Source: Octopus sinensis (taxonomy: Eukaryota). From it: DNA of 63,868 bases. Made by a program: the position numbers and the translations under genes. Location: assembly GCF_006345805.1 (NCBI RefSeq), contig NW_021832256.1, positions 1-63,868 of the forward strand. Direction: 5' to 3'. The notes below the pieces were generated by a model. It was not told the DNA's origin and made no database searches. It saw nothing but the letters and a program-made list of their open reading frames with translations. How positions within the stretch are numbered: the stretch's first letter is position 1; each line of letters begins with the position of its first letter. Of the stretch, positions 7,953 to 52,618 are shown piece by piece.

Positions 7953-8071
7953 AGTTCTAATGAATTAGAATACAGAGGGTTACTTACTGCTCGAAAGTTT
8001 TTGCTTTCTCCTCCGTTGGTTTGTCCTCGAGAAGATCCCAGTACAGTTTCTTTGTGAGATATTTTTGGCAT

Positions 8072-17560: not shown

Positions 17561-17567
17561 AAAGACC

Positions 17568-19350: not shown

Positions 19351-20530
19351 TTATGGCTGCCCCCTCGTTATCGAGTATGGCCACTGCACGAAGCTTAACT
19401 GTTACTGGTGCTGTGATCGAATGTGACTTTTTAGCCCAGCTAAAGATCTACAATGTCTTGTACAGAATTGGCAACTAAAACCTTTACTGGTAATAGCCGG
19501 CTGTAGTTGTAACTGGGCTTCATGTACCTTTGCATGTCGTTTAAGTCCTCCTGCCGAATTACACTCTCTTCCACATGCCCGACAGATATGATTAGTATGG
19601 TGTGTTACACCACCACCATTAGCCAGGTTGTCACTCATCTGTCTAGTTTTATGACTACGAAGATGACTCATGAGTCCAGCTTTACTGAGGCAGTGTCTTG
19701 CACAGACATTGCATGTCAGAATCAAAGGAAAACCCTTCCCTTCTGGAAGTGTAACAGCGATGCCCTTCCTGACATCTCTCCTTACTTTCTCATGTGCAAC
19801 TCGAGATTTCTCAAAAGTAGCTGTCCCCTCGTGCACAATCCTTCTCCACCTGCTACGATCAATAGCTATGCCTTCCCATGTGTCAGGAGAGATGCAAGCA
19901 TCTCTTAAGGAAGCCTTCAGCAAGTCCTTATACCTCTTTTTTGGTTTATGTGGAGGTCGTTCTCCTTTAGCTAACTCTCCATAAAAGAGTTGTTTTGGCA
20001 TCCTTGAATCCTTCATCCTGACCAGATGACCACTCCATCTGAGCCTTTGCTTTAACACAAGAGCTTCCATACTTTCACACCGAGAGCCTTCCAATATTTC
20101 AAGATCACTGATGCGATCCTCCCACTTAATGCCATAGATCCGTCTGAGACACACCTGATGGAAATGTTCCAGTTGTTTAAGGTGGTATCGATATGTGACC
20201 CACGTCTCGCAGGTATAGAGAAGAGAAGGGAGGACACATGTCTTGTACACCTTTATCTTTGTCTTTCTGCATATGTCTCGCTGACTCCAGGGGCGCCTTT
20301 CTAGCCTTCCGAAAGCATCACTTGCTTTCCTAATTCAGTATGGAATTTCACCATCCAAATTGCTATATCTATTAACAGTGCTTCCCGGGTAGACAAACTG
20401 ATCGACTACATCAAGTCGTTTACCATACACATAGATATTTGGTACACTATACTGCCTACCAGGGGTAGTTTGGTACATGACAACAGTTTCTTGAGACTGA
20501 CTGTCAACTCTAAGGCAGTGCAAGCATCAG
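19351..20530 (-). mobile_element. 5'-truncated RTE/BovB-like LINE with three C-terminal C2H2 fingers and (ATGT)n tail
   Basis: YKTCVLPSLLYTCETW...RLRWSGHLVRM...QLFYGEL (RTE RT C-terminus), then three CxxC...HxxxH fingers. Confidence 0.85.
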
Positions 20531-27785: not shown

Positions 27786-28975
27786 AGCACACCGGACGAA
27801 ATGCTTTGTGGTATTTCGTCCGCCGCTGCGTTCTGAGTTCAAATTCCGCTGAGGTCGACTTTACCTTTCATCCTTTCAGGGTCGATAAATTAAGTACCTA
27901 TTTCTTTGTTACCCACAAGGGGCTAAACACAGAGGGCACAAACAGGGACAGACATAGGTATTAAGTCGATTACATCGACCCCAGTGCGTAACTGGTACTT
28001 ATTTAATCGACCCCGAAAGGATGAAAGGTAAAGTCGACCCCGGCGGAACTTGAACTCAGAACGTAGCGGCGGACGAAATACCTATTTCTCTACTACCCAC
28101 AAGGGGCTAAACACTGAGAGGACAAACAAGGACAGACAAACAGATTAAGTTGATTATATCGACCCCAGTGCGTAACTGGTACTTATTTAATCGACCCCGA
28201 AAGGATGAAAGGTAAAGTCGACCCCGGCGGAACTTGAACTCAGAACGTAGCGGCGGACGAAATACCTATTTCTCTACTACCCACAAGGGGCTAAACACTG
28301 AGAGGACAAACAAGGACAGACAAACAGATTAAGTTGATTATATCGACCCCAGTGCGTAACTGGTACTTATTTAATCGACCCCGAAAGGATGAAAGGTAAA
28401 GTCGACCCCGGCGGAACTTGAACTCAGAACGTAGCGGCGGACGAAATACCTATTCTCTACTACCACAAGGGGCTAAACACTGAGAGGACAAACAAGGACA
28501 GACAAACAGATTAAGTTGATTATATCGATCCCAGTGCGTAACTGGTACTTATTTAATCGACCCCGAAAGATGAAAGGTAAAGTCGACCCCGGCGGAATTT
28601 GAACTCAGAACGTAGCGGCGGACGAAATACCTATTTCTCTACTACCCACAAGGGGCTAAACACTGAGAGGACAAACAAGGACAGACAAACAGATTAAGTT
28701 GATTATATCGACCCCAGTGCGTAACTGGTACTTATTTAATCGACCCCGAAAGGATGAAAGGCAAAGTGAACCTCGGCGGAATTTGAACTCAGAACATAGC
28801 GGCAGACGAAATACCGCTGAGCATTTCGCCCGGCGTGCTAACGTTTCTGCCAGCTCGCCGCCTTAGATAAATTAAGTACCAGTTATGCACTGGGGTCGAT
28901 GTAATCCACCTAATCCGTTTGTCTGTACTTGTTTGTCCCCTCTATGTTTAGCCCCTTGTGGGCAATAAAGAAATA
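27786..28975 (+). mobile_element. SINE family M copy interrupted by an antisense five-unit family M concatemer
   Basis: Host halves 27786-27898 and 28866-28975; GATAAATTAAGTACC duplicated at 27884-27898 and 28866-28880. Confidence 0.85.
27899..28865 (-). mobile_element. SINE family M concatemer (one head + five bodies) with 15-bp TSD
   Basis: Unit boundaries at 27899, 28083, 28267, 28451 and 28632; single head ending at 28865. Confidence 0.88.
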
Positions 28976-30546: not shown

Positions 30547-31522
30547 CTGTGGCTGTGTGGTAAGTAGCTTGCTTACCAACCACATGGTTCCGGGTTCAGT
30601 CCCACTGTGTGTCACCTTGGGCAAGTGTCTTCTACTATAGCCTACCTTGTGAGTGGATTTGGTAGACGGAAACTGAAAAGAAGCCTATCGTATATATGTA
30701 TATACATATATGTGTAGGAGTGGCTGTGTGGTAAGTAGCTTGCTTACCAACCACATGGTTCCGGGTTCAGTCCCACTGCGTGGCACCTTGGGCAAGTGTC
30801 TTCTGCTATAGCCCCGGGCCGACCAATGCCTTGTCAGTAGATTTAGTAGACGGAAACTGAAAAGAAGCCTGTCGTATATATGTATATACATATATGTGTA
30901 GGAGTGGCTGTGTGGTAAGTAGCTTGCTTACCAACCACATGGTTCCGGGTTCAGTCCCACTGCGTGGAACCTTGGGCAAGTGTCTTCTGCTATAGCCTAC
31001 CTTGTGAGTGGATTTGGTAGACGGAAACTGAAAAGAAGCCTATCGTATATATATATACGACAAAAGGAAAAGATCCTTATTTACATTTCTGAAGAAAAAA
31101 AGGATACCCTACCCCCACCCCTAACCCTAACCCTAAAATAGATTGGCTGTGTGGTAAGTAGCTTGCTAATCAACCACATGGTTCCGGGTTCAGTCCCACT
31201 GTGTGGCACCTTGGGCAAGTGTCTTCTGCTATAGCCTCGGGCCGACCAATGCCTTGTGAGTGGATTTGGTAAATGGAAACTGAAAGAAGCCCGTCGTATA
31301 TATGTATATATATATATGTGTGTGTGTATGTGTTTGTCCCCCTAGCATTGCTTGACAACCGATGCTGGTGTGTTTACGTCCCCGTTACTTAGCGGTTCGG
31401 CAAAAGAGACCGATAGAATAAGTACTGGGCTTACAAAAGAATAAGTCCCGGGGTCGATTTGCTCGATTAAAGGCGGTGCTCCAGCATGGCCGCAGTCAAA
31501 TGACTGAAACAAGTAAAAGAGT
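30547..31522 (+). mobile_element. SINE family A array: three 5' halves, a foldback fragment, then a complete copy
   Basis: Heads at ~30547, 30717, 30900 and 31145. Confidence 0.8.
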
Positions 31523-33201: not shown

Positions 33202-33227
33202 ATGGAAGACAAGCGGGGGACAAGTAG
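33202..33227 (+). CDS. RYBP: RYBP/YAF2 homologue, first coding exon (MEDKRGTS + AG, phase-2 intron)
   Basis: ATG GAA GAC AAG CGG GGG ACA AGT AG|GTAAGT parallels vertebrate YAF2 MGDKKSPT-R; phase matches the exon at 48173; possible acceptor TTAG at 33167-33170. Confidence 0.75.
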
Positions 33228-33530
33228 GTAAGTTCGAGCTCCCTGCTACTCTCCTGTTTATATATGTGGTTGGATGTTTCACCTTCTTTTACACTTTCCA
33301 TCATGAATACGCGTATATCGCTGTGTATATGTATGTATATTTACGATTATCTTGCACCTAATGATGATTATATACACTCACTAGTGTACAACAGTGTGTA
33401 TATAAAAAAAAAAACCAAATGATAATTGTACACAATAATATAAATATATTTGGATATGTGTGTATATATAGCATAGGTCAGTCACCCAGTTCGTGTATGT
33501 TTGTATATATAATATTATATATATAATATA

Positions 33531-33564
<34 letters not shown>

Positions 33565-34069
33565 TATATATATATATAATATATATGTGTGTGTGTATGT
33601 ATGTATATGAATGATAATTATACACACTAGTGTAGTGTATAAGTAAATACAGAATCATAATTGCACATAGTAACATTATATATAGTAAATGAACTGGGTG
33701 TATAATGCATAAAGCATTTTTACATATATCGGCTTTTCTGAAATTCCATATATATACATATATATATAGATATACATATATATAATATATATATAGGTAC
33801 TATATATATGTATATATATATATATATGTATATGAAGCACTGGGGGGTCAGTCACTTAGTGTATGTATAAATCTATATATGTAAACATTTTTTGAATCTG
33901 ATATTATTTATATCTGAATAGACTTTATAAGACTAGAAATGTATTTGATGATACATTTCATAAATAAAGGCCACCACCTATAAATTCAATTTGCTTACTG
34001 AGATCATTGAGATCCCCTATCGACTAATTACTAATTAGCAACACACTGTATTTAGTGTGTGCTGTGTGT

Positions 34070-34070
34070 A

Positions 34071-34111
<41 letters not shown>

Positions 34112-34635
34112 GTTATATCTATATATACATGTATATATATATATATATATTCATACATACATATATTCATACTTATGTATATATATATATATATGTATGT
34201 GTATATATATATGTGTATATATATATATATGTAGTATATATATATATAGGTGTATATATATGTGTATGTGTATATATATGTGTTATATATATATATATGT
34301 GTATGTGTATATATATGGTGTATATATATATATATGTGTATGTGTATATATATATGTGTATGTATATATATATGTTGTATATATATATATATGTGTATAT
34401 ATATATATATGTGTATATATGGTATATTATTATATGTGTATATATTATATATATATATATGTTATTATATATATGTATAATATATAGTGTATAATATGTA
34501 TATATATATATGTATATATTATATGTATATATATATGTATATATATATGTATCTATATATGTATATATATATGTATCTATATATGTATATATAATGTATA
34601 TATATATGTAGATATATATGTATATATATAATATG

Positions 34636-34673
<38 letters not shown>

Positions 34674-34680
34674 GCATCTA
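34070..34680. repeat. (TA)n/(TATG)n low-complexity tract
   Basis: Direct inspection. Confidence 0.9.
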
Positions 34681-34809
34681 GACAGCTATATTATTATATT
34701 ACAAGCCCATCTTTTACGTGTAGATGCAATGAAAACAGAGACTGGGTCATGCTGCTAGTACGACTACTATTACTACTACATATGTGTTGTGTGTTCATCC
34801 ATACACACA

Positions 34810-34851
<42 letters not shown>

Positions 34852-35048
34852 TTGTGTGTATACATAAATATATTTTCGCCACTGCCAAGGTTTTAATGTA
34901 CCGGCCCGTCTAGGAAGCAGTAATTGTTGTCTGAGATCCATTTTTTGAATCTTCATTTTAAATCATATGTATATATGGAAATAAATAAATACGTGTGTGT
35001 ATATATACATACATACATACACACCATACAATATATCTATATATATAT

Positions 35049-35081
<33 letters not shown>

Positions 35082-35769
35082 GTATAGACACATACATATA
35101 TATGGTGTATGGAGATGGTGAGGTAGGTATTATTGAAGATGCAGGCCAAAGGCCTTTTAAAATTAGGAAAAATAAAATTTATGTATATATATAGTGTGTA
35201 TAAATTTATATATATACATAGATATGTATGTATATATATATATATATATATACACACACTTATTACAGTTGTAGTAATTAACATGCAGAGCTAGGACCTA
35301 CTTAAAAAAACAGAGTTAGTAGTAGCAGCCTGCTTTGAAATATTTGCAATATACATAAATATATACATCTATATCTCCATAACTAATGAGTTCATAGAGT
35401 AGTTCGATCGATATATTAACAGTAACGGTGAATATCACAACAATATCGGTGGTAATTTGTTAATAATAATGCAATAAAGCGAATGGTTCTCTGACAAGGG
35501 AACAGTGGCGATAAACAATAACCGCGAGGCTGATATCAGCCAGCCGTAGTTTCGTATCCGCAATTCGGTTCGTTTTCTTACAAATGGCAGAATATATTAA
35601 AATTCTTTGGTCGGAATGGATTCGGGGTTTTCTTGGAGAACCTTTTGGGTTCCTGTTTTGAATTCTACGGGGTTTGCTGAATCGCAAACTATTAGAATGG
35701 TACCAGTTCCTTATTGAACCCGATTTAGCTGCATGTTCCCTCTCACGACATATCACAACTTGTGGTGTG

Positions 35770-36535
35770 TATATATAATGTATATTATAAGCGTATATAT
35801 ATTTATGTATATATAATGTATATTATAAGTGTATATATAATGTATATTATAAGTGTATATATATTTATATATATATAATGTATATATAATGTATTTTGTA
35901 TGCATATATATATGTATATATAATGTATATTATATGCATATATATATGTATATATAATATATATTATATGCATATATATGTATACATAATGTATATTATA
36001 TGCATATATGTATGTATATATAATGTATATTGTATGCATATATATATATGTATATATAATGTATATTGTATGCATATATATATGTATATATAATGTATAT
36101 TGTATGCATATATATGTATATATAATGTATATTATATGCATATATATATGTATATATAATGTATATTGTATGCATATATATATGTATATATAATATATAT
36201 TCTATGCATATATATAATGTATATTATATGCATATATAATGTATATTGTATGCATATATAATGTATATTATATGCATATATATAATGTATATTGTATGCA
36301 TATATAATGTATATCATATGCATATATATAATGTATATTATATACATATATATATGTATATATAATGTATATTATATGCATATATATATGTATATATAAT
36401 GTATATTATATGCATATATATATGTATATATAATGTATATTATATGCATATATATATGTATATATAATGTATATTATATGCATATATATATGTATATTAT
36501 ATGCATATATATATGTATATATAATGTATATTGTA

Positions 36536-36570
<35 letters not shown>
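35770..36570. repeat. AT-rich minisatellite (ATATAATGTATATTATATGCAT-type units)
   Basis: Direct inspection. Confidence 0.85.
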
Positions 36571-36572
<2 letters not shown>

Positions 36573-36895
36573 TCATCATCGTTTAGCGTCCGTTTTCCAT
36601 GCTAGCATGGGTTGGACGGTTCTACTGGGGTCTGTGAAGCCAGAAGGCTTTATCAGGCCTACTCAAATCTGGCAGTGTTTCTACGGCTGGATGCCCTTCC
36701 TAACGCCAACCACTCCGTGAGTGTAGTGGGTGCTTTTTACGTGCCACCCGCACAGGTGCCAGACAGAGCTGGCAAACGGCCACGAACGGATGGTGCTTTT
36801 TATGTGCCACCGGCACGAGGCCAGTCGGGGCGGCGCTGGCAACGGTCGCGAAACGGAAGGTTCTCTTACATGCCACCGGCACTGGTAACACATCT
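36570..36895 (-). mobile_element. Family C (RTE 3' UTR) copy
   Basis: (CAT)n tail and GTGCCACCGGCAC modules. Confidence 0.75.
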
Positions 36896-36917
36896 GCATA
36901 TGTATATATATATATAT

Positions 36918-37333
36918 AATCAAAATAAGCAACAAATATATCTCCGGTAATTTGGTACGATCGTTTCACGCTACATCATTTTATTAAATATTGTAAATAT
37001 TACAACAGTTTTAAAATGTTGAGCAATCACCAGCCATTAATAGATCTCATTAATACATAATTTTCATATTAATTGATAACATTATAGAGAAGGTAGATAT
37101 ATAGACAAAGATGTTGATTTGTCTCTATATAGACATCTTTGTCTATATATCTACCTTCTCTATAATGTTATCAATAAATATGAAAATTATGTATTAATGG
37201 GAAACCTCTATAAATGGCTGATGATTGCTCAACATTTTAAAACTGTTGTAATATTTACAATATTTAATAAAATGATGTAGTGTGAAACGATCGTACCAAA
37301 TTACCGGAGATATTCTTGTTGCTTATTTTGATT
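36918..37333. mobile_element. ~197-bp inverted repeat with hammerhead cores (Penelope-like)
   Basis: Arms 36918-37114 and 37133-37333; right arm continues into sequence related to 57935-58140. Confidence 0.75.
37215..37298 (+). ncRNA. Hammerhead ribozyme with extended stem II; left-arm copy (36953-37036, -) has a core mutation
   Basis: TGG-CTGATGA-[long stem II]-GAAAC(GATC)GTA-CCA. Confidence 0.65.
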
Positions 37334-37469
37334 ATAATCACCCCATGGATTTATATGGATAACACCATACAAAGTTCTGGTGCATCTAACTTAAGTACCA
37401 TATTCATCTGAATCTAAATTTTGCTGTATATATATATATATATATATATATAATGTATGTTATATGTAT

Positions 37470-38235
37470 ATTCATATGATGTACAAATAACAAGCGGTGT
37501 TCCACAGGGCACTGTCTTGGGGCCACTGCTATTCATAGTGGCCCTTTCAGACATACCCTCAGTTGCTAAGATGGCCACTCTTGCTAGCTATGCAGATGAC
37601 ACAAAAGTCTCCCACACAATACAAAACCCTGGAAATATTGCACATCTGCAACAGGAGTTGGATACAATATACACGTGGGCTGAGGACAACAACATGCAGC
37701 TTAATGCAGGTAAGTTCTAGGCCCTGCGCTACCTTTACACAAAGGTAAACGACATGCAGACTGAATTCACTGGCCCGGGAAGAATTGCAATCCCTGAGTC
37801 AAAATCAGTGTGTGACCTGGGCATTGACATGAGCAATGATGCATCTTTCCAAGTGCATATTACTAATTTGGTAATAAAATGCAGACGGCTTGCTGGATGG
37901 ATTCTCCGAACTTTCAGAACAAGAAAGAAGGAGACACTGATGGTCCTTTGGAAAACATTTGTCCTCAGCCGCTTGGACTACTGCTCCCAACTATGGTCAC
38001 CACACAATATAAAACTAACAGCAGAACTTGAAGCAATTCAAAGAAGCTACACAAAGAAGATCATCTCAATGCAACATATCAGCTACTTGGAAAGACTGAA
38101 AGTATTAAACTTCTTCTCCCTAGAGTGGAGGCGGGAGAGATATGCGGTGATATACATCTGGAAAATCCTGGAGGGTCTTGTCCCAAACTTTGGCATTCAA
38201 AGTTACTCCAACCGCAGAACGGGGCGCCACTGGTT
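37470..38235 (+). mobile_element. CR1/L2-like LINE RT fragment
   Basis: SGVPQGTVLGPLLF, YADDTK, DLGI, SRLDYCSQLWSP, RRERY. Confidence 0.85.
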
Positions 38236-38339
38236 TCACATATTAGTGTAGCTCATTCAGCGGTGGTGCCCCAGCATGGCCTCAGCTTTCGGGCTGAAAC
38301 ATCTTTAAGGATTTATATAATGTATATTATATATATGAT

Positions 38340-38870
38340 GTATCATCATCATCATGATCATTTAGCGTCCGCTTTCCATGCTAGCATGGGTTGGACGGTT
38401 CAACTGGGGTCTGGGAAGCCAGATGGCTGCACCAGGCCCAGTCTGATCTGGCAGAGTTTCTACAGTTGGATGCCCTTCCTAACGCCAACCACTCCATGAG
38501 TGTAGTGGGTGCTTTTTACGTGCCACCGTCACAGGTGCCAGACGGGGCTGGAAAACGGCCACGGTCGGATGGTGCTTTGTACATGCCACTGGCATGGAGG
38601 CCCATTGGGGCGGTGCTGGCAACGGCCACGTTCGGATTGTTCGCTTATGTGCCACCGGCACTGGTATTACAGCTACAATTTCCATTGATGTTGATCGATT
38701 TTGATTTTGATTTTCACTTGCCTCAACAGGTCTTCACAGGTAGAGTTTTGTGTCCCAAGAAGGAAAGGTATGCATAAGTGGGCTGGCTATGTCCCAGGTA
38801 GAGGCCACGGGTTATGGTCTCACTTGTTCTGCCGGGTCTTCCCACGCACAGCATACTTCCAGATTACATA
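38340..38870 (-). mobile_element. Family C copy extending into the RTE ORF2 end
   Basis: Continues into GATTTTCACTTGCCTCAACAGGTCTTCAC, as at 40195. Confidence 0.75.
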
Positions 38871-38985
38871 CATTTATATACATTCCAGATTACATACATT
38901 TATATACATTCCAGATTATATACATTTATATACATTCCAGATTATATACATTTATATACATTCCAGATTATATACATTTATGTGT
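38868..38985. repeat. 26-bp tandem repeat CCAGATTA(C/T)ATACATTTATATACATT, about 4.5 copies
   Basis: Direct inspection. Confidence 0.8.
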
Positions 38986-39224
38986 ATTTACAGATGATGT
39001 ACATGTGTATTTAGATAAATATTATTTAATGTCCAGTTTTCATGCTGGTATCGGCTGGACAGCTTGACCCATAAGACATGTGTGGGGTTATGCATATATA
39101 TACATAGGTAATGTGAATACATAATTTTACCTATTACTTGTTCTGGTCATTAGACTGCAGCCATGCTGGAGCACTTGCCTTGGACAATGAATCGGCCTCA
39201 GTACTTATTTAATAATCATAATTA

Positions 39225-39490
39225 TTGCCGATGCCAGCGCCGCCTTGACTGACTTCCGTGCCGGTGGCACATAAAAAGCACCAATCCGATCATGGCCGTT
39301 GCCAGCCTCGCTTGGCACGTAAAAAGCACCCACTACACTCGCGGAGTGGTTGGCGTTAGGAAGGGCATCCAGCTGTAGAAACACTGCCAGATCAGACTGG
39401 AGCCTGGTGCAGCCTTCTGGCTTCCCAGATCCCCGGTCGAACCGTCCAACCCATGCTAGCATAGAGAATGGACGTTAAACGATGATGATG
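39225..39490 (+). mobile_element. Family C copy
   Basis: Ends in GGACGTTAAACGATGATGATG. Confidence 0.75.
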
Positions 39491-39704
39491 AATTGTTTCA
39501 AATTTTGGTTCAAGGCCAACAATTTTGAGGGGAGGGGCAAGGGAATTGCATCAGTCCCATTGTTCAGCCTATTTCCTATTTTATCAGCAATGAAAAAGGA
39601 GTACCGGCAGAGTTGACCTCAGTGGAATTTGAACTCAGAACAGAGAACCAGAAGAAATTCCACAAGGCGTTTTTTGTCTGATCTGCTAATGATTGTGCAA
39701 ACTC

Positions 39705-42700
39705 ATCATCATGATTGTTTAACGTCCGCTTTCCATGCTAGCATGGGTTGGACGGTTCAACTGGGGTCTGGGAAGCCTGAAGGCTGCACCAGACCAGTCA
39801 GATCTGGCAGTGTTTCTACAGCTGGATGCCCTTCCTAACGCCAACCACTCCGTGAGTGTGGTGGGTGCTTTTTATGTGCCACCGACACAGGTGCCAGACG
39901 AGGCTGGCAACGGCCACGCTCGGATGGTGTTTTTTATGTGCCACCGACACAGGGCCCAAACGAGGCTGGCAAACGGCCACGCTCGGATGGTGCTTTTAAC
40001 GTGCCACCGGCACGGAGGCCAGGCGAGGCTGGCACGGCCACGATCGGATGGTGTTTGTTACATGCCCACAGCACGGAGGCCAGTCGATGTGGTACTGGCT
40101 ACGGCCACGTTCAGATGGTTTTCTTATGTGCCACCGGCACTGGTATCACAAAAATACAAATTCCATTGATGTTCATCGATTTTGATTTGGTTTGATTTTC
40201 ACTTGCCTCAACAGGTCTTCACAAGTGTCCCAAGAAGGAAGGTATACACAGGTCTTCTCGCGCGCAGCATACTTCCAAAGGTCTCAGTCTCTGGTCATTT
40301 CCTCGGTGAGACCTAAAGCGCGAAGGTTGTTCTTCACCACCTCGTCCCAGGTTTTCCTGGGTCTACCTCTTCCACAGGTTCCCTCAACCGCTAGGGTGTG
40401 GCACTTTTTCACACAACTATCTTCATCCATTCTTACTACGTGTCCATACCAGCGTAGACGCCTCTCTTGCACACCACATCTGATGCTTCTTAGGTCCAAC
40501 TTTTCTCTCAAGGCACTTACACTCTGTCGGGTATGAACACTGACATTACACATCCAACGGAGCATACTGGCTTCATTTCTTGCGAGCTTACGCATATCCT
40601 CAGCAGTCATGGCCCATGTTTCACAGCCATGTAGCATGGCTGTTCGCACACATGCGTCATACAGTCTGCCTTTTATTCTGAGTGAAAGGCCTTTTGTCAC
40701 CAGCAGAGGTAAGAGCTCTCTGAACTTTGCCCAGGCTATTCTTACTCTAGCAGTTACACTTTCGGCACACCCACCCCTGCTACTGACTTGGTCACCTAGG
40801 TAACGGAAACTATCAACTATTTCAAGTTTTTCTCCCTGTAATGTGGCGGAAGATGGTCTCTGCACATCTTCAGTCTTTATTGAACCAGAGCATCTGCCAC
40901 ATACAGAAACTATCTTCCTAGTTAGCCTTCCTTTGACATTGCTGCACCTCTTATGTGTCCATAGCTTACACTTGGTGCATCTTATAGAGTTCCTACCTAT
41001 GCCTTTTCTACAGATCGAGCAGGGCCATCTACCTGAAGGTGTTTGAGATTTGTCTACCTTCCTACTTATTACGACTTTGGTTTTAGCTAGATTGACTCTA
41101 AGGCCCTTCGATTCTAATCCTTGCTTCCACGCCTGAAACTTCACCTCAAGTTCTGATAGTGATTCAGCAATTAGAGCAAGGTCGTCAGCATAGAGGAGCT
41201 CCCAGGGGCATCCTGTCTTGAATTCCTCCGTTATTGCCTGGAGGACTATGATAAATAGGAGGGGGCTGAGGACTGAGCCTTGGTGGACCCCAACCTCCAC
41301 CCAGAATTCTTCACTGTACTCATTGCCAACCCTCACCTTACTAACAGCGTCCCTGTACATGGTATGCACAGCTCTCACTAACCATTCATCTACCCCTAGT
41401 TTCCTCATTGACCACCAGATGAGGGATTGGGGGACCCTGTCAAAGGCTTTCTCCAAGTCAACGAAAGCCAGGTACAGAGTTTTATCTTTGGCTAGGTATT
41501 TCTCCTGCAGCTTTCTCACCAGAAATATGGCATCAGTGGTGCTTTTCCCTGGCACGAAACCAAACTGCATCTCGTCTAGGTTGACTCTCTCTCTAATCAA
41601 TTGGGCTATGACCCTTTCCGTAACCTTCATTACCTGATCCAACAGCTTAATACCTCTGTAATTACTTGTATCTAGGGCGTCACCTTTACCTTGTAGCAGT
41701 TGACTATTATGCTGCTACACCAGTCATTGGTATGACTCCTTCGTGTATCACCTGGTTAATAATATACGGGTGACTAGGCTATAACCAACACTGCCAGATT
41801 ATTTTGAGCATCTCCGCAGTAATTCCTGACGGGCCTGGGGCTTTCCCTGTCTTCATGCTTCCAATTGCCTTAACTACCGTGGAACTGTCAACTCGGATAG
41901 CTGGTCCCTCTATTGGGTCGACATTCGGCAGACTCTCTTTATCCCATTCATTCTCTTTGTTGAGCAACCTTTCATAGTGGCATCTCCAAACCTCTCTCTT
42001 TGCATCCTCATTTTTTCTTATCTGCTTCCCCTCTAGCTAAATACACCTGTCTCCTAGCTTCTCTTTTCGCAGTCTGATACAATTCCCTACTACCGCCTTT
42101 CCTCCAGTCCTTCCAAGCCTCTCTCTTGTCTCTAATAGCCCTGTCTACAACATTGTTCCACCACCACGTTACCCTGGGACGAGATGGGACTTTGCTCCAT
42201 CCACAGATCTGGTCAGTAGCTCTCAGCAGATTGTCCCGTAGAAACCTCCAGTTGGCTTCCACATTATGTGATGCTATATCCCCTTCTATTTTGTCGAAAG
42301 CTTCGAGTAGAACTTCTCTAAATCTCCGTCCATTTACAGGATCTTTAAGTTTCCAGACTCTTCTCCTCCGAGCTGGTCTTCTTCTGGGCAGCCATTTGGC
42401 CCTGATCCTGAAGACGCTAACTACTAATCTATGTTGAGGAGTACATTCCTCGCCTGGGAAGGTTTTGGCATTTATAAGCAGCCCTCTTTCCCTCTTTCTG
42501 GCAAGGATGTAGTCGATCTGGCTAGTGTGTCTGCCAGAACGGTAAGTGACTAGGTGAGAGGTGGGTTTCCTGAAGTTGGTATTGCAGACCATAAGGTCAT
42601 TTGCATCGCAGAACTCCAGCAGCCTGGTTCCCTTCTCATTGCGAGAACCAAAACCGTAGCCCCTGTGTATGCCATAGAAGCCCCCGACATGCCGTCCAAC

Positions 42701-42945
42701 ATGTCCATTGAAGTCACCTGCCACAAAGAGAAGGTCACTGTCATTTGTCAACGAGGTAGTCTGTAATAGGGTGTTGTAGAATTGGTCTTTCTGTCCTTCC
42801 GGTAGCCCTGGTTGAGGGGCATATGCCGAGATGATGGTAACTGACCTATGGTGAAGCACTAATCTAATCTTAAGTACTCTGTCACTTACTCTGACTACCT
42901 CGATTACCTTATCTACTCATTTCTCCACAAGAAGTATACCCACGC
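39705..42945 (-). mobile_element. 5'-truncated RTE-like LINE (APE + RT with Cys-rich insert) with long modular 3' UTR
   Basis: ORF 42008-42859 (IISAYAP, VAGDFNGHVG, SQIDYIL); ORF 40284-41642 (DLEKAFD, HQGSVLSP, YADD, RLRWYGHV); UTR ends in (GAT)n. Confidence 0.9.
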
Positions 42946-42990
42946 CTGTTCATAATAATAATAATAATAATAATAATGATAATAATAATA

Positions 42991-44098
42991 GCAGTACCAG
43001 ACAGTGGCTCTCATGGCTTCTGATCTTAACTGATTGGAAGTGTTATCATGTACATTGTTTTGTCTTAGTATAAAAGATGGTCTACAGCAAATATTCTGCT
43101 CAATACCACAAATTTGCTTGTCAGTTGTTTGACCACAACCAGTTGAGCATGTCCCTTAGTGGCTGACGATATGTGCATCTCTGATCACGAGCAGAAGTAG
43201 TGGGGGAGCATCATAGCCATGTGTTGAGAGGGGTCCTTTGGGGTTTGGATAATTCACCTCTGGAAACATGGCTGGTTTGTTCAACATCCTTAAACAATCC
43301 TTATTCAGGGACCTTTTGAGCGGGATGGGTTACTCGACCTGAAGAAAATTCTAACTGGGCCCCACCTGCAAGGTCTTGCGCTGTTTATCTTGATATGAGA
43401 TCACCATGTCGCGCACATATGGTTGTGATGCATGTGCCTGGTGTACCCTTATCAGATGGGTAGTGATGATGGGTATACTGGGCTTCGTATATTTTACCCC
43501 AGTGTCACTTTGATGGCATGCTCTGCTCGCTCACTCAATAATAATAATAATAATAGCAGTACCAGACAGTGGCTCTCGTAGCTTCTGATCTTAACTGATT
43601 GGAAGTGTTATGTACATTGTTTTGTCTTGGTATAAAAGATAGTCTACAGCAAATATTCTGCTCAATACCACAAATTTGCTTGTCAGTCGTTTGACTTTAA
43701 CCAGTTGAGCATGTCCCTTAGTGGCTGACGATATGTGCATCTCTGATCACGAGCAGAAGTAGTGGGGGAGCATCATAGCCATGTGTTGAGAGGGGGTCTT
43801 TGGGGTTTGGATAATTCACCTCTGGAAACATTGGTGGTTTGTTCAACATCCTTAAACAATCCTTATTCAGGTACCTTTTGAGTGGGATGGGTTACTCGAC
43901 CAGAAGAAAATTCTAACTGGGCCCCACCTGCAAGGTCTTGCGCTGTTTATCTTGATATGAGATCACTGTGTCGCGCACATATGGTTGTGATGCATGTGCC
44001 TGGTGTACCCTTATCAGATGGGTAGTCATGATGGGTATACTGGGCTTCGTATATTTTACCCCAGTGTCACTTTGATGGCATGCACTGCTCTCTCACTC
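42991..44098. mobile_element. Two tandem copies of an unclassified ~545-bp element embedded in (AAT)n
   Basis: Copies 42991-43536 and 43556-44098; (AAT)n before, between and after. Confidence 0.7.
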
Positions 44099-44218
44099 AG
44101 TAGTAATAATAATAATATTTCTTTTATTTTCCACTAGGGTGAAAGATGAGCAGGACAATACGAAAACAGATATAAAGTGTTGGGGTTTGCATATAATGAA
44201 TTGATAAGAGAATTATCT

Positions 44219-44594
44219 CTTCTCTCTCTATATAAACGGCAGTTTGTCTGTGCGTGTTTCTGTGTGTCTGTTTGCTTGTACCCTCACCCTGACCACGGCT
44301 TTCAACCGATTCTGATGAAACTTGACACACACATAGCCCAATGTCATAATTCAAAACTAACCCAGCAAAAATTTTGAAAAGTTCCCCCAGTTCTGAAAAA
44401 AATCGATAAATTCGACATGGGGTTGAGAATCAGAAACACGAACCACAAACTGTCTAGGGGATGCAACTCCACCTTTTTTAAATCTCAAAAAAAAATTTAC
44501 CATCATTTTTTTCCATTTTTTGGCTATAACTCTCTAAAAATGCTTTATAGTTATTTCCCTTACAAACCTGAGCAACGCCGGGCGATACTGCTAG
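44219..44594 (+). mobile_element. Non-autonomous Helitron-type element
   Basis: TC..TATATAAA 5' end; 3' end identical in type to 24874-25111 (GAGCAACGCCGGGCGATACTGCTAG). Confidence 0.65.
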
Positions 44595-44608
44595 TATATA
44601 TATATATA

Positions 44609-45030
44609 CTAGCAGTATTGCCCGGCTTTGCAAAATGGTCACATTTAATTCAAAGCGTTAAAAATGTTATGAAAACAATTGGTATGTGTTCACAAAGTCC
44701 AAACAATTAATACGGAAAAATCCTCCAGGCTACATCCTGAAAATTCATTTCTTTGCCGAATTTCTTCAATGTTTATGGCGATTCGTTTTTATATCTTGAT
44801 TTTTTATTTTTCATGCAATTTACGCATGCTTGCACGCGTGGTGAACACAGTTCACGTCAAACAGCTGACTGAGTAAAGTTCACTATTCAATGCATGGGAT
44901 AAGGCCTAAACACACACATTATCGATTTTTGCACTTGCGAGATGAATTTCGGAACAGAAATAGCGCAGTTCAATTTTCATTCGCCTAAACTTTAAATGAC
45001 CCATTTGTTGGCTAGGAGGAGATGTGCCGG
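44609..45030 (-). mobile_element. Opposite-strand Helitron-type 3' end (5' limit uncertain)
   Basis: CTAGCAGTATTGCCCGGC at 44609 is the reverse complement of the Helitron terminus. Confidence 0.45.
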
Positions 45031-45038
45031 GAAGTTAA

Positions 45039-45790
45039 CCCTTTCGTTACCAAACCGCCCAAAGCCGCCCGAAAAAAATTTTGGTTCATGTGACCAAGCC
45101 GCCCAAACCCGCCCGTATTTACCTATTCATATTTAAATGAGAATATCAGAGCAAATCTCTTTAGTACATTCGTGAAAACACGTGATTATACTTCGTAAAC
45201 AGTTCATCTACAGTTTTGTACAACGATCGAAGTGTAATTTTAATTCCGTGAATTTTGGGAGATTTTTTTCCGAAATTTGTTCCTATTGTGTTTTCAAAAT
45301 TTGTAATTCTGACAAAAAATGGATACGAATTTCATTATATCAAGCAGCGAGTCAGAATTCGAAGGATTTTCTACTGAAGACCTTAAATCTAACTCTATGA
45401 CTGAAAAAAAAAAAGCACATGGTATTTGATAATGAATCTGATGTTTCATTTTCCGAAAGTGAAAACAGTGAATCCGAGAGCTCCGACAGCGATAAAGAAA
45501 ATGAATTGGCACCTGAATGGAGTGAAAATTTAAAAACTGTTTCTCTTGGTGATTTTTCTGAAGAAACTGGACCAAGCCACAGACTTTCCCAGGAGAGTAA
45601 AGCCTTAGACTATCTCTATTTACTTTTTCAAATGAGCCTATTTGAAATCATTACGACGGAAACGAACCGTTACGCTAAAGAAAGCGAAAGAAAGGATAGT
45701 TAGTGGTTTCCCACAACCTTAAATGAAATTAAGACTATTTTGCCATAAATATTAGTATGGGTATCAGAAAGTTACCCAGAATAACAAATT
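45039..45790 (+). mobile_element. piggyBac-type transposon remnant (left end + transposase N-terminus)
   Basis: TTAA|CCCTTTCGTTACC; acidic N-terminus then LDYLYLLF..LFEIITTETNRYA..WFPTTLNEIK, typical of PGBD/piggyBac proteins. Confidence 0.75.
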
Positions 45791-46109
45791 CTATCGTAAA
45801 ATTTTGTTGTATACCCAATTGAATATTAGCTAATAACCCATTTTCTATAGCGATGTTTGAACAAAATTTTAATAATTTTATATTTTGTTGAATTTACCTG
45901 TATCTACCTGTGACAAAAATTATAGTATAGAATTGGTTGAGAACATTTCATTAAATTATCTTCCAAAAATCATGTTACTATATTGATAAATAAAAAAGTT
46001 ATAGTTGTTTAATGAAACCAGACTAAATTTATGATTATGTTAGAAATTAATTGTTCAATTCATGTATTTTTACCTGAGGGAAACAATTTTTTTTTCACAT
46101 GACGTAATA

Positions 46110-46457
46110 CTTCTCTTCATCAATAAAAACAGTCATCCTGTTTGTTGTTCACACAACATTTTGGCTGATATACCCTCCAGCCTTTATCAGGTGTCTTGGG
46201 GAAGTTTCGAACCTGGGTTCTCATTCCTAAGGTATTTTTTTATGTTATTTTCCACATGAGACCTTTTCTTTTTTTCGAAGCGTCTCCTCTATTGGGAGTT
46301 TTGTAAATTGTTGAATTTTTCGTTGTTGTAAAGCTTGTTTACACGGACTTTTTTCTTTCGAAAAACGAACAAAACCTTTTGTAACCTTTCGTCCTGTTTT
46401 GTCCCTTTATGTTTTCCAATCATATTTGTCAGCCCTTGTGGCCAATAAAAAGAATTA

Positions 46458-46503
<46 letters not shown>

Positions 46504-46574
46504 TCCCTGCTTGGAATTGAACTCGGAATCTTGGGGTTAGTAGCCCTTGCTCTTAGCCACTATGCCATATGCCC
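46110..46574 (-). mobile_element. tRNA-headed element with (AAT)n linker and hammerhead, interrupted by a Tx1-like 3' fragment
   Basis: Head 46499-46574 (GAGTTCAATTCC B-box); hammerhead 46151-46195; same layout in the + copy at 46578-46710. Confidence 0.6.
46250..46455 (+). mobile_element. 3' end of a Tx1-like element joined to (ATT)n
   Basis: CAGCCCTTGTGGCCAATAAAAAG resembles the termini of elements A and B; U-rich 3' UTR. Confidence 0.55.
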
Positions 46575-46577
46575 ACA

Positions 46578-46710
46578 GACATATGGCGTAGTGGTGCAAT
46601 TCCAAGCAGTGACCTGAATAATAATAATAATAACAACAACAACATCAAAAAATACCTTAGGAATGAGAACCTAGGTTCAAAATTTCCCAAGACACCTGAT
46701 GAAGGCTGGG
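46578..46710 (+). mobile_element. Internally deleted copy of the tRNA-head/hammerhead element
   Basis: CATATGGCGTAGTGG..CAATTCCAAGCAGTGACCTG(AAT)n..AATACCTTAGGAATGAGAACC..GACACCTGATGAAGGCTGG. Confidence 0.6.
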
Positions 46711-46982
46711 GAATAAAAAAAACTTGTTGGAAACAGCTGTAGTGAATGAACTAATTTCCATCTGTTATATATACTTGCCATAACACAAACAAGGGATGCA
46801 TACATAGTATACAACATTAAAAGGAAAGCAAGCAAAAATAGGATGAAATAGTGGTTGTGGTCCTCCTGTTAAAGGATGGTCTCTAGGCATAATTGAGGAA
46901 CTTCACCACCTGAGATCTCCCTGAATGCCAACGGCAAATGTCCGTTCCAATTCCTGTTCTCCAACTCACAGGTCTATACTTA

Positions 46983-47296
46983 GAATATTACCATCCTCTC
47001 TTGCGATTTTTGAATATTACCATCCTCTCTTGCGATTTTTGAATATTACCATCCTCTCTTGCGATTTTTGAATATTACCATCCTCTCTTGCGATTTTTGA
47101 ATATTACCATCCTCTCTTGCGATTTTTGAATATTACCATCCTCTCTTGCGATTTTTGAATATTACCATCCTCTCTTGCGATTTTTGAATATTACCATCCT
47201 CTCTTGCGATTTTTGAATATTACATCCTCTCTTGCGATTTTTGAATATTACCATCCTCTCTTGCGATTTTTGAATATTACCATCCTCTCTTGCGAT
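46983..47296. repeat. 29-bp tandem repeat, about 11 near-identical copies
   Basis: GAATATTACCATCCTCTCTTGCGATTTTT; no spacers. Confidence 0.95.
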
Positions 47297-47678
47297 AAGG
47301 AGGAAAAGTGAATGAGGGTTCTACCAAAGAGAAATGTCTCCGTCCTCATGCCTTTCAACCTCGTCCACCAAACAACCCCTTTCACTACAGCCACCATGCA
47401 AAGGAAAACTGCCTAACTTGCTCAATTAAAGGAAGGTAGTGGGGCAATCATCACTGTAATCATCATCATCATCATTATTCAACATCTGTTTGAGTGGTTG
47501 GTGTTGTGAAGGGCATCCAGCTGTAAAAACCTTACCAAAACTGACCTTGCTTGTGCTTGTGCCACATAAAAAGCACTAAGTCTACTCTGCTGAGTGGTTG
47601 TTGTTAGGAAGGGCATCCAGCTGTAAAAACCTCACCAAAACTGACCTCACCTCTGCTTGTGCCATGTAAAAAGCACTA

Positions 47679-48191
47679 AATCCACCGTTCTTCACTTCCA
47701 TCCCCATTGACCCTTCTAAGATTTCACCATCTTCTACTTCTCAGGTCCAAACGACGCTCTAAGAATCCACCGTTCTTCACTTCCATCCCCATTGACCCTT
47801 CTAAGATTTCACCATCTTCTTCTACTTCTCAGGTCCAAACGACACTCTAAGAATCCACCGTTCTTCACTTCCATCCCCATTGACCCTTCTAAGATTTCAC
47901 CATCTTCTACTTCTCAGGTCCAAACGACACTCTAAGAATCCACCGTTCTTCACTTCCATCCCCATTGACCCTTCTAAGATTTCACCATCTTCTACTTCTC
48001 AGGTCCAAACGACACTCTAAGAATCCACCGTTCTTCACTTCCATCCCCATTGACCCTTCTAAGATTTCACCATCTTCTACTTCTCAGGTCCAAACGACAC
48101 TCTAAGAATCCACCGTTCTTCACTTCCATCCCCATTGACCCTTCTAAGATTTCACCATCTTCTACTTCTCAGGTCCAAACGACACTCTAAG
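47679..48191 (+). repeat. 85-bp tandem repeat x6 spanning the intron 3' end, acceptor and first 19 nt of the RYBP exon
   Basis: Units start at 47679, 47764 (88 bp), 47852, 47937, 48022 and 48107. Confidence 0.95.
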
Positions 48192-48295
48192 GCCCCTGAC
48201 GAGGGTTACTGGGACTGCAGTGTGTGTACTTACCGAAATTCTCCCGAGGCTTACAAATGTGAAATGTGTGACGTACGTAAAGGTACTTCAACAAG
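48173..48295 (+). CDS. RYBP: RYBP/YAF2 homologue exon encoding the RanBP2-type (NZF) zinc finger
   Basis: CTCAG|[43 protein letters not shown]|GTGAGT; closely matches RYBP/YAF2 [31 protein letters not shown]; 123 nt, phase 2-2. Confidence 0.95.
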
Positions 48296-48910
48296 GTGAG
48301 TAAGGTGCCACCGTTGTGCCACCAGTGGCACACCTTTCATTGTTTTACTGTTTTTTTTTTTCGTTTGTTGGAGTTTCTTTAGATTTTTTTTTTCTTCGTT
48401 GCTTTATATTTTGTCTTTTCTGTGTGTTTGTGTGTGTGTGTGTGTGTTGTTGTATATCTGTGTGTATGCATATTTCTGTGAGGGAGTGTATTGTCAGTGC
48501 GCGTGTGTGTATGTGTGTGCGTGTATCCTTGTATGTGTGTTTGTGTATGCCTCTGTGAGTGCGTATGTATGTGTAGTGTGTGTGTGTGTGTATGTGTGTG
48601 CGCGTATCCTTGTATGTGTGTTTGTGTATGCTTCTATGAGTGCGTATGTATGTGTAGTGTGTGTGTGTGTGTGTATCCTTGTATTTGTGTTTGTGTATGC
48701 CTCTATGAGTGCGTATGTTTGTATGTGTAGTGTGTGTGTGTATGTAACTCTATGTGTGTATGTCTCTGCATGTGTGTCTCTGTGAGTGTATATGTGTATC
48801 CGTGTGGGAGTGTTTGTGGCTGTGTGTTTGCATGCGTGAGTATATCCGTGTATATATATATATACAAAAAAGGTTAACATATATATATATATATATATAT
48901 ACATATGTGC

Positions 48911-52200: not shown

Positions 52201-52618
52201 AAGGCAGCGAGCTGGCAGAAACATTAGCACGCCAGGCGAAATGCTTGGCGGTATTTCGTCTGCCGCTACGTTCTGAGCTCAAATTCCGCCAAGGTCGACT
52301 TTGCCTTTCATCCTTTCAGGGCCGATAAATTAAGTACCAGTTATGCACTGGGGTCGATGTAATCGACTTAATCCATTTGTCTGTCCTTGTTTGTCCTCTC
52401 TGTGTTTAGCCCCTTGTGGGTAATAAAGAAATTGGTATTTCGTCTGCCGCTACGCTCTGAGTTCAAATTCCGCCGAGGTCGACTTTGCCTTTCATCCTTT
52501 CAGGGTCGATAAATTAAGTACCAGTTACGCACTGGGGTTGATGTAATCAACTTAATCCATGTGTCTGTCCGTGTTTGTCCCCTCTATGTTTAGCCCCCTG
52601 TGGGCAATAAAGAAATAA
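52201..52618 (+). mobile_element. SINE family M dimer (head + two bodies)
   Basis: GTATTTCGTC at 52251 and again at 52435. Confidence 0.85.

What the first reader, a model, noticed from the sequence alone, without database searches (positions are those of the whole stretch)
47679..48295. Six-fold tandem multiplication of the splice acceptor of the RYBP/YAF2 zinc-finger exon
Seen: each 85-bp unit contains a pyrimidine tract, CTCAG and the first 19 exon nt, giving AG acceptors ending at 47744, 47832, 47917, 48002, 48087 and 48172. Only the last is in frame. Any upstream acceptor reads on through its unit and then GTC CAA ACG ACA CTC TAA, a premature stop before the finger. Every junction is also CAG/GT. 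Known: RYBP/YAF2 are non-canonical PRC1 subunits, and AGGT-containing duplications are a proposed route to intron gain. Inference: a VNTR that could tune RYBP dosage through NMD-coupled 3' splice-site choice or weak recursive splicing.
Basis: partly seen in the sequence, partly recalled or inferred. Interest (0 to 1): 0.75.

Follow-up and report, generated by a model that had tools for sequence, protein, structure and literature searches.

The report
Splice-acceptor minisatellite in octopus RYBP/YAF2
An 85-bp stretch spanning the end of intron 1 and the first 19 bases of the zinc-finger exon of the single octopus RYBP/YAF2 gene is repeated six times head to tail; this kind of repeat is already known from amphioxus ("mirages") and is most likely a young, largely harmless one.

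Summary
TRF finds an 85-bp × 6.0 array at 47679-48191 with 98% matches. CAG acceptors end at 47744, 47832, 47917, 48002, 48087 and 48172. Only the last gives the conserved protein; each of the other five gives a 42-43 codon truncated frame.

The window is a whole unplaced scaffold of Octopus sinensis GCA_006345805.1. The gene is the single-copy RYBP/YAF2 orthologue, and its exons 3-4 lie on another scaffold. The 85-bp unit occurs nowhere else in the 2.7-Gb assembly. It abuts a dispersed 100-bp repeat, and both array edges carry CACTAA/CACTCTAAG microhomology, which fits origin by slippage.

About 15% of this window already lies in arrays of period 20 or more, so catching an acceptor is not improbable. 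The same architecture is published as amphioxus "mirages" and, mirror-wise, as the human F7 intron-7 VNTR. In both, the duplicated sites are reported silent.

Recursive splicing is unlikely because the regenerated donor GTCCAA is weak. Copy number, polymorphism and actual acceptor use cannot be checked here. My verdict is a real, ordinary-to-mildly-interesting new member of a known kind.

The parts
33202..33227 (+). Coding part of exon 1 of the RYBP/YAF2 orthologue: ATG GAA GAC AAG CGG GGG ACA AGT AG (MEDKRGTS + 2 nt), followed by the donor GTAAGT
   Evidence: Read from the sequence. The N-terminus matches Haliotis MEEKRSSSR and the related octopus model P0123, which starts KRGTSRSKRHSK.
33228..48172 (+). 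Intron 1 (14,945 nt, phase 2) if the last acceptor is used. It contains LINE fragments and many tandem arrays.
47491..47685 (.). 1.9 copies of a 100-bp unit from a dispersed, often tandemly arrayed genome-wide family. Its 3' end (GCACTAA|ATCCAC) runs into the first bases of the 85-bp array.
   Evidence: TRF. Own-genome search gave 97 scored matches out of 1953 first-look candidates, and the second local copy matches unit positions 1-95 at 47591-47685.
47679..48191 (+). 85-bp x 6 minisatellite. Each unit holds about 12 nt homologous to the end of the 100-bp repeat, about 54 nt of intron 3' end (yUnAy matches at -51, -35 and -19; a 17/20 pyrimidine tract; CAG), and the first 19 nt of exon 2.
   Evidence: The unit is found only at this locus in the 2.72-Gb assembly.
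47743..47744 (+). Decoy acceptor AG 1 (exon-like part carries G for A); use gives a 43-codon truncated frame
47831..47832 (+). Decoy acceptor AG 2 (pyrimidine tract 3 nt longer); use gives a 42-codon truncated frame
47916..47917 (+). Decoy acceptor AG 3; identical to the authentic site over 100 nt upstream and 19 nt downstream
48001..48002 (+). Decoy acceptor AG 4; identical over 185 nt upstream and 19 nt downstream
48086..48087 (+). Decoy acceptor AG 5; identical over 270 nt upstream and 19 nt downstream. Its use reads into TAA at 48188-48190.
48171..48172 (+). Authentic (only productive) acceptor AG of exon 2
   Evidence: Open frame; homology of SKRHSK to mollusc and vertebrate orthologues
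48173..48295 (+). Exon 2 (123 nt): G + [40 protein letters not shown] + AG. It encodes the RanBP2-type zinc finger.
   Evidence: Splicing to exon 3 on contig C1007 gives R-KPRLNTHVAQQ.
48296..48301 (+). Donor of intron 2, AAG|GTGAGT

Best explanation
This is a young 'mirage'-type minisatellite. An 85-bp segment spanning the intron 1/exon 2 boundary of the single-copy RYBP/YAF2 orthologue of Octopus sinensis was duplicated in tandem and then expanded to six copies by slippage or unequal exchange. The first duplication was probably mediated by the short direct repeat CACTAA / CACTCTAAG, formed by the end of an adjacent dispersed 100-bp repeat and the exon's own codons. The authentic boundary sits at the 3' edge of the array, so use of the exon-proximal acceptor (48172) removes all five extra copies with intron 1 and yields the normal, conserved mRNA. 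The five upstream copies are sequence-equivalent decoy acceptors. Any use of them gives a frameshifted mRNA with a stop 42-43 codons in, which would be unproductive and probably degraded by NMD. I infer that they are silent or used at a low level, so the array is neutral to slightly deleterious and not an evolved regulator. Shown here: the anatomy, the uniqueness of the unit, the gene identity, the frame consequences and the microhomology. Inferred: which acceptor is used, the mechanism of origin and the neutrality.
For: Array anatomy and equivalence of the six acceptors. The unit is unique to the locus in the 2.72-Gb assembly. Only the last acceptor is productive. The residues encoded by the duplicated 19 nt (SKRHSK) are conserved in Haliotis and other molluscs and in vertebrate YAF2. 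They are identical in a related octopus gene model that uses the canonical exon 1/exon 2 junction (P0123). The gene is single copy: one PF17219 hit and one strong zinc-finger exon hit in the genome. A grossly hypomorphic arrangement is therefore unlikely to persist. The neighbouring 100-bp repeat is a high-copy family that itself forms tandem arrays, and it ends in GCACTAA|ATCCAC exactly where the 85-bp array begins. 23% of the window is tandem repeat and 14.7% has period >=20, so minisatellite birth is frequent here. Near-identity of the units (2 differences in 513 bp, both in the two 5'-most units) indicates a recent origin. [quoted passage not shown] The human F7 IVS7 VNTR has identical pseudo-donors that stay silent (PMC1557585).
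Against: There is no transcript or read data for this locus, so silence of the upstream acceptors is inferred only from precedent and from gene essentiality. The six acceptors are identical over at least -66 to +11, apart from the TTC insertion at about -16 in unit 2. Each has its own branch-point-like motifs. The array RNA is less structured than shuffles (z = +2.71). Nothing in the core signals therefore favours the last site. A first-come or 5'-to-3' scanning rule would favour the upstream ones. NMD would hide aberrant products in ordinary RT-PCR, so the 'no aberrant mRNA' reports for mirages are not decisive. The scaffold is a small unplaced piece of a fragmented region (the gene is split over two scaffolds), so the copy number could be wrong.
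Confidence: 0.65

Rival explanations
1. Splicing rheostat. The decoy acceptors capture a substantial, copy-number-dependent share of intron-1 splicing. The products are destroyed by NMD, so array length sets the RYBP/YAF2 dose and through it variant-PRC1 activity.
For: All six acceptor modules are identical in their core signals, and each has its own yUnAy motifs and a 17/20 pyrimidine tract. The array is unstructured and accessible. Every upstream choice gives a stop in exon 2, upstream of at least two exon junctions. An intronic VNTR that shifts splicing towards an NMD isoform is documented for human TERT (PMC11830802).
Against: No polymorphism data and no aberrant transcript or ORF are on record. 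The related-species model has the canonical junction. In published arrays of the same architecture the extra sites are reported silent. The array looks young and lies in a genome region where 15% of sequence is minisatellite. Chance capture is therefore a sufficient explanation, and there is no sign of selection.
Confidence: 0.12
2. Assembly artefact. The true locus has one unit, or a different number, and the six-copy array is an error of long-read assembly or polishing in a poorly assembled, repeat-rich scaffold.
For: The window is a 63.9-kb unplaced scaffold and the gene is broken across two scaffolds with no overlap. The amphioxus BflGb6 mirage was reported as aberrantly assembled in the genome draft.
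Against: Units 1 and 2 carry private differences (a substitution and a 3-bp insertion), which is not what a simple stutter of one unit gives. A 513-bp array is far shorter than the PacBio reads used for this assembly (named in PMC10700109). The flanks are unique and continuous. An error in the exact copy number remains quite possible; complete absence of the duplication is unlikely.
Confidence: 0.15
3. Recursive splicing or nascent intron gain. Intron 1 is removed stepwise through the CAG|GT junctions, or each GT...AG unit behaves as an 85-nt intron, as in Rogers' AGGT-duplication model. Upstream acceptor use would then still end in the normal mRNA.
For: Every unit junction is CAG|GT, and each 85-nt GT...AG interval carries a branch-like motif and a pyrimidine tract. 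[quoted passage not shown]
Against: The regenerated donor would be TAG|GTCCAA. It matches the U1 consensus only at -2, -1, +1 and +2, whereas the gene's real donors are GTAAGT, GTGAGT and GTAAAT. Known recursive sites need a strong regenerated donor (established knowledge). No new intron is needed to explain a viable mRNA.
Confidence: 0.03

Closest known systems
[quoted passage not shown] 2002; globins BflGb6/BflGb9, PMC3087553; TnC; PGBD5, PMC3902484)
   Same: A tandem array whose unit spans a splice site plus a short piece of exon. The authentic boundary lies at the array edge. Units are tens to about 160 bp, a handful of copies, near-identical interior units and diverged edge units. BflGb6 duplicates the 3' end of an intron plus the 5' part of exon 2, with 6 units on one haplotype, which is the same layout as here.
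   Different: The phylum differs (a cephalopod mollusc, not a cephalochordate). I found no report of mirages outside amphioxus in the searched library. Here every decoy gives a frameshift and stop. Length polymorphism and normal splicing, both shown in amphioxus, are untested here.
Human F7 intron 7 37-bp VNTR, whose first unit spans the exon 7 donor (PMC1557585)
   Same: A minisatellite that multiplies a splice site into identical pseudo-sites next to the authentic one. The exon-adjacent site is the productive one.
   Different: It multiplies the 5' splice site, not the 3' splice site. Selection there was explained by 5'-to-3' scanning, which picks the first (exon-proximal) donor. The same direction of scanning would pick the wrong acceptor here, so the mechanism cannot simply be transferred.
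[quoted passage not shown]
   Same: A tandem duplication carrying AG|GT. The potato case also inherited its branch site, pyrimidine tract and 3' splice site from a parental intron/exon boundary.
   Different: No new intron is created or required here. The copies simply lengthen an existing intron, and the GT side (GTCCAA) is a poor donor.
Intronic VNTRs that modulate splicing towards NMD isoforms (TERT VNTR6-1, PMC11830802)
   Different: TERT VNTR6-1 acts through G-quadruplex structure deep in an intron, not by multiplying a splice site. The octopus array is G-poor (8% G) and unstructured.

Membership tests
Mirage-type minisatellite (tandem duplication of an exon/intron boundary) | Head-to-tail array of a short unit (tens to about 160 bp) with high identity | tested here: met
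   85 bp x 6.0, 98% matches, TRF score 992; unit-by-unit listing
Mirage-type minisatellite (tandem duplication of an exon/intron boundary) | The unit contains a real splice site plus adjoining exon sequence, and the authentic boundary lies at the array edge | tested here: met
   The exon start at 48173 is fixed by homology of [15 protein letters not shown] to orthologues and by frame. The array ends 19 nt into the exon.
Mirage-type minisatellite (tandem duplication of an exon/intron boundary) | Length instability or polymorphism between haplotypes and individuals | not testable with these tools
   Only one assembly and one copy of the locus are available. Related genomes could not be retrieved for this exon.
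Mirage-type minisatellite (tandem duplication of an exon/intron boundary) | Regular splicing is retained despite the duplicated sites | not testable with these tools
   Only indirect evidence exists: a canonical junction in the related-species model P0123, and neither the canonical nor the aberrant product of this species is in the protein collection.
RYBP/YAF2 (non-canonical PRC1 subunit) | N-terminal RanBP2-type (NZF) zinc finger | tested here: met
   PF00641, E = 8.1e-11, 41.4 bits against a cut-off of 27
RYBP/YAF2 (non-canonical PRC1 subunit) | C-terminal YAF2_RYBP (RING1B-binding) motif in the same gene | tested here: met
   PF17219, 70.3 bits against a cut-off of 22.4, at C1007:1407-1505(-), the only hit in the genome. 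Exon 3 on the same scaffold continues the frame. Linkage to the window's exons is inferred from single-copy status and colinearity with orthologues, not from a contiguous assembly.
Recursive splice site (ratchet point) | A 3' splice site immediately followed by a strong regenerated 5' splice site (AG|GTAAGT-like) | tested here: not met
   The junction is CAG|GTCCAA, and positions +3 to +6 all depart from the consensus
Intron gain by AGGT tandem duplication (Rogers model) | Duplication of an exonic AGGT segment, so that the GT of copy 1 and the AG of copy 2 bound a new intron | tested here: not met
   The AG|GT here is an existing intron/exon boundary, not an exonic AGGT. The copies extend intron 1, and the donor side is weak.
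Regulated unproductive splicing (AS-NMD) | Demonstrated use of the PTC-generating site, and conservation of the arrangement | not testable with these tools
   The PTC is shown in silico. No transcript evidence was found, and no orthologous DNA for this exon could be retrieved.

The most novel reading that the evidence does not exclude
The array is a length-polymorphic splicing rheostat. Five decoy acceptors, each with its own branch point and pyrimidine tract, divert a copy-number-dependent share of RYBP/YAF2 pre-mRNA into NMD. A fast-mutating minisatellite would then set the dose of a variant-PRC1 subunit in octopus individuals or tissues. It would also be the first mirage-type boundary repeat described in a mollusc.
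Probability: 0.1. Interest if true: 0.6.

Novelty: new member of a known kind. Interest (0 to 1): 0.3.

Why it matters
If the array is real and the upstream copies are silent, it is a clean natural test case for 3' splice-site choice. Six acceptors with identical branch, tract, AG and first 19 exon bases differ only in their distance to the rest of the exon. This is the acceptor-side counterpart of the F7 donor VNTR that was used to argue for oriented scanning. It would also extend 'mirage' boundary minisatellites from amphioxus to cephalopods, whose genomes are very rich in tandem repeats, and it bears on how exon boundaries tolerate local duplication. If the decoys are used, a hypermutable repeat would modulate a Polycomb subunit, which would be of wider interest. 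There is no evidence for that yet. On a practical level, the repeat and the split of the gene over two scaffolds explain why octopus RYBP/YAF2 gene models are truncated or wrong.

Tried and rejected
1. I searched for the full-length or N-terminal octopus protein in the 5.8-billion protein collection. Only a C-terminal O. bimaculoides model with a spurious N-terminus (P0005) and one partial related model (P0123, UniParc UPI0006957447) turned up.
2. I searched for the predicted 42-aa aberrant product and found nothing.
3. I tried to fetch orthologous DNA. P0123 has no contig on record. The O. bimaculoides contig for P0005 covers only the exon-4 region and is half N. An exact-pattern scan of metagenome contigs for exon 2 gave no hit.
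4. I looked for exons 3 and 4 in the window by motif and tblastn. They are not there; they lie on scaffold C1007.
5. I tested whether the two scaffolds overlap at their ends. They share only dispersed repeats.
6. I considered AAG|G at 48191/48192 as the true acceptor, which would make the whole array intronic. I rejected it because it deletes 19 nt (a frameshift) and removes the conserved SKRHSK.
7. I considered a coding or antisense role for the array. All three forward frames hit stops within each three-unit cycle.
8. I considered RNA structure that might mask the upstream sites. The array is less stable than shuffles, z = +2.71.
9. Gao & Lynch 2009 and Cañestro et al. 2002 are not held in the library, so they are cited only through papers that quote them.

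Full report
**What is there**

The sequence at 47679-48191 is a head-to-tail array of an 85-bp unit. TRF reports 6.0 copies, 98% matches and a score of 992. Unit by unit:
- The copies start at 47680, 47765, 47853, 47938, 48023 and 48108.
- Copy 1 has one substitution (CGACGCTC where the others have CGACACTC).
- Copy 2 has a 3-bp TTC insertion in the pyrimidine tract.
- Copies 3-6 are identical.
- Each is followed by GTCCAA, so every junction reads CAG|GT.

The array ends 19 nt after the last CAG. The next base is G in the real exon and A in the other units.

**The gene**

Exon 2 (48173-48295) encodes G+[40 protein letters not shown]+AG. It hits Pfam Zn_ribbon_RanBP at 41.4 bits against a cut-off of 27.

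Exon 1 is ATGGAAGACAAGCGGGGGACAAGTAG|GTAAGT at 33202-33227.

The rest of the gene is not in the window.
- A whole-genome search with PF17219 (YAF2_RYBP) finds a single hit of 70.3 bits on another scaffold, C1007:1407-1505(-).
- A search with the Haliotis orthologue finds exon 3 at C1007:3802-3930(-).
- The splice frames fit...GTST-R-KPRLNTHVAQQ... and ...KRAN-R-PPRLKNIDRSS....
- The zinc-finger exon and the C-terminal motif each occur once in the genome, so this is a single-copy RYBP/YAF2 orthologue of about 162 aa.

The assembly statistics are 2,719,151,902 bases in 13,516 sequences. They match those tabulated for Octopus sinensis GCA_006345805.1 (13,516 scaffolds, 2719.2 Mb; PMC10700109). 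The window is a complete unplaced 63.9-kb scaffold.

**Is the exon boundary right?**

This matters because an AAG|G at 48191/48192 would make the whole array intronic. Homology settles it.
- Haliotis has MEEKRSSSRSKRQSKSAPDEGFWDC, other molluscs have SKRPAK or AKRQPK, and the window has [24 protein letters not shown].
- A related octopus gene model (P0123, UniParc UPI0006957447) begins [21 protein letters not shown], which is the canonical exon 1/exon 2 junction.

The 19 duplicated exon bases therefore encode conserved residues, and 48172 is the authentic acceptor.

**Consequences of each acceptor**

Joining exon 1 to each AG gives the following:
- Each of the five upstream sites gives MEDKRGTSRSKR(H/R)[21 protein letters not shown](S)TSQVQTTL-stop, 42-43 codons.
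- Only 48172 reads on into the finger.
- For the acceptor at 48087 the stop is the TAA at 48188-48190.

The stop lies in exon 2, upstream of at least two exon junctions. The usual rule would therefore predict NMD; that is established knowledge and was not tested here.

**Are the decoys competent?**

On sequence alone they are equivalent to the real site.
- Relative to 48172, acceptors 3-5 are identical for 100, 185 and 270 nt upstream and for 19 nt downstream.
- Acceptor 1 is identical for 66 nt upstream and 11 nt downstream.
- Acceptor 2 differs only by the TTC insertion.
- Each has yUnAy matches with the A at -51, -35 and -19, and 17 of 20 pyrimidines before the CAG.
- The array RNA is G-poor (8% G, 67% pyrimidine) and folds less well than shuffles (z = +2.71), so structure does not hide the upstream sites.

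What distinguishes the last site is only what follows it: the purine-richer real exon (46% pyrimidine) and the strong donor AAG|GTGAGT 123 nt downstream. Cross-exon definition is the obvious candidate for why it would be preferred. That step is an inference.

**Origin**

The 85-bp unit occurs nowhere else in the 2.72-Gb assembly; all six matches are local. The search scores only the best candidates, so this carries that caveat.

Immediately upstream lie 1.9 copies of a 100-bp unit (47491-47685).
- This unit belongs to a very abundant dispersed family, with 1953 first-look candidates of which 40 were scored, giving 97 matches.
- The family often forms 100-bp tandem arrays elsewhere, for example eight consecutive copies on C7.
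- Its local second copy matches unit positions 1-95 and ends in ...AAAAAGCACTAA|ATCCACC, exactly where the 85-bp array begins.
- The array's other edge is ...ACACTCTAAG|GCCCC.

The duplicated segment was therefore flanked by an imperfect short direct repeat (CACTAA / CACTCTAAG) formed by a repeat-element end and the exon's own H-S-K codons. That is the classic substrate for slippage or unequal exchange. This too is an inference.

The region and genome are prone to such events.
- 23% of the window is in TRF arrays and 14.7% is in arrays of period >=20, with 26 such arrays in 64 kb.
- A 29-bp x 10.9 array at 99% identity lies 400 bp upstream in the same intron.

Only 2 differences in 513 bp, both in the two 5'-most units, argue that the expansion is recent.

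**Comparison with what is known**

This architecture has a name. [quoted passage not shown]
- In the globin BflGb6, the 3' end of an intron plus the 5' part of exon 2 is repeated, with 6 units on one haplotype and 3 on the other.
- The interior units there are homogenised and the edge units diverged.
- RT-PCR suggested that regular splicing is not disturbed (PMC3087553).

The mirror image on the donor side is the human F7 intron-7 37-bp VNTR. Its identical pseudo-donors are functional but silent (PMC1557585).

It does not apply well here. The AG|GT is an existing boundary, no new intron is needed, and the GT side is GTCCAA. The gene's real donors are GTAAGT, GTGAGT and GTAAAT.

For the same reason recursive splicing, which needs a strong regenerated donor, is unlikely.

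A VNTR that shifts splicing towards an NMD isoform exists for human TERT, but it works through G-quadruplexes (PMC11830802). This G-poor array cannot form those.

**What could not be tested**

I found no transcript, read or second-allele data.
- Neither the canonical 162-aa product nor the 42-aa aberrant product is in the protein collection. The tools note that records of this genome or very near ones may be left out.
- The O. bimaculoides model P0005 has a spurious, repeat-derived N-terminus without the finger. Its contig covers only the exon-4 region and is half N.
- P0123 has no contig on record.
- A metagenome scan for exon 2 found nothing.

Copy number, polymorphism ('VNTR'), ancestral state and acceptor usage therefore all remain open.

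The scaffold is small and unplaced, and the gene is split over two scaffolds without overlap. One amphioxus mirage was mis-assembled in its draft genome. An error in the copy number is a live possibility. The private variants in units 1 and 2, and the shortness of the array relative to long reads, make complete artefact unlikely.

**Verdict**

The best explanation is a young, microhomology-born mirage-type minisatellite that is removed with intron 1 through the exon-proximal acceptor. It is neutral or slightly leaky (confidence about 0.65). It is a new member of a known kind, apparently the first noted in a mollusc. Its interest is modest unless transcript data show copy-number-dependent decoy use.

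Noticed in passing
window 1-63868 and G000:C1007:1-18204: The single RYBP/YAF2 gene is split across two unplaced scaffolds. Exons 1-2 are in the window. Exon 3 (about C1007:3802-3930) and exon 4 (about C1007:1293-1508) are on the minus strand of an 18.2-kb scaffold. The scaffold ends share only dispersed repeats. Intron 2 is therefore at least about 30 kb, and any annotation of this assembly will give partial models.
   Followed up: yes
window 47491-47685: A 100-bp unit (1.9 copies) abutting the array belongs to a very abundant dispersed family (1953 first-look candidates). The family commonly forms 100-bp tandem arrays elsewhere, for example 8 copies at C7:105464149-105464944. It is probably a satellite-bearing transposable element, inserted only about 60 nt upstream of the acceptor.
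   Followed up: partly
window 46983-47296: A 29-bp x 10.9 minisatellite at 99% identity (GAATATTACCATCCTCTCTTGCGATTTTT) lies in the same intron, 400 bp upstream. It is another very young array.
   Followed up: no
window, whole: 23% of the window lies in TRF arrays and 14.7% in arrays of period >=20 (26 arrays). Several arrays of about 181-184-bp period share one unit (17561-18277, 27895-28815, 30645-30997, 52250-52616 in the opposite orientation) and look like a SINE-type element that multiplies in tandem.
   Followed up: partly
window 4522-7964(-), 11257-13741(-), 40284-42916(-): There are non-LTR retrotransposon fragments (RVT_1, Exo_endo_phos, zf-RVT) on the minus strand. Two lie upstream of the gene and one inside intron 1.
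   Followed up: partly
window 19402-20334(-): A 310-aa open frame has weak C2H2 zinc-finger matches, all but one (zf-C2H2_jaz, 22.9 vs 22.6 bits) below Pfam's cut-offs. It lies about 13 kb upstream of RYBP exon 1, and it is not clear whether it is a gene or a fragment.
   Followed up: no
P0005 / L016 (O. bimaculoides LGKD02014783.1): The NCBI O. bimaculoides 'YY1-associated factor 2-like' model (188 aa) has the correct last exon. Its N-terminus is unrelated and looks repeat-derived, and it has no zinc finger. The gene seems mis-modelled in that species as well.
   Followed up: partly
window 48373-48830: Directly after the exon 2 donor comes a T-run and then about 400 bp of (TG)n-rich imperfect repeats with 69-81-bp periods. 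Exon 2 is therefore flanked by tandem repeats on both sides.
   Followed up: no
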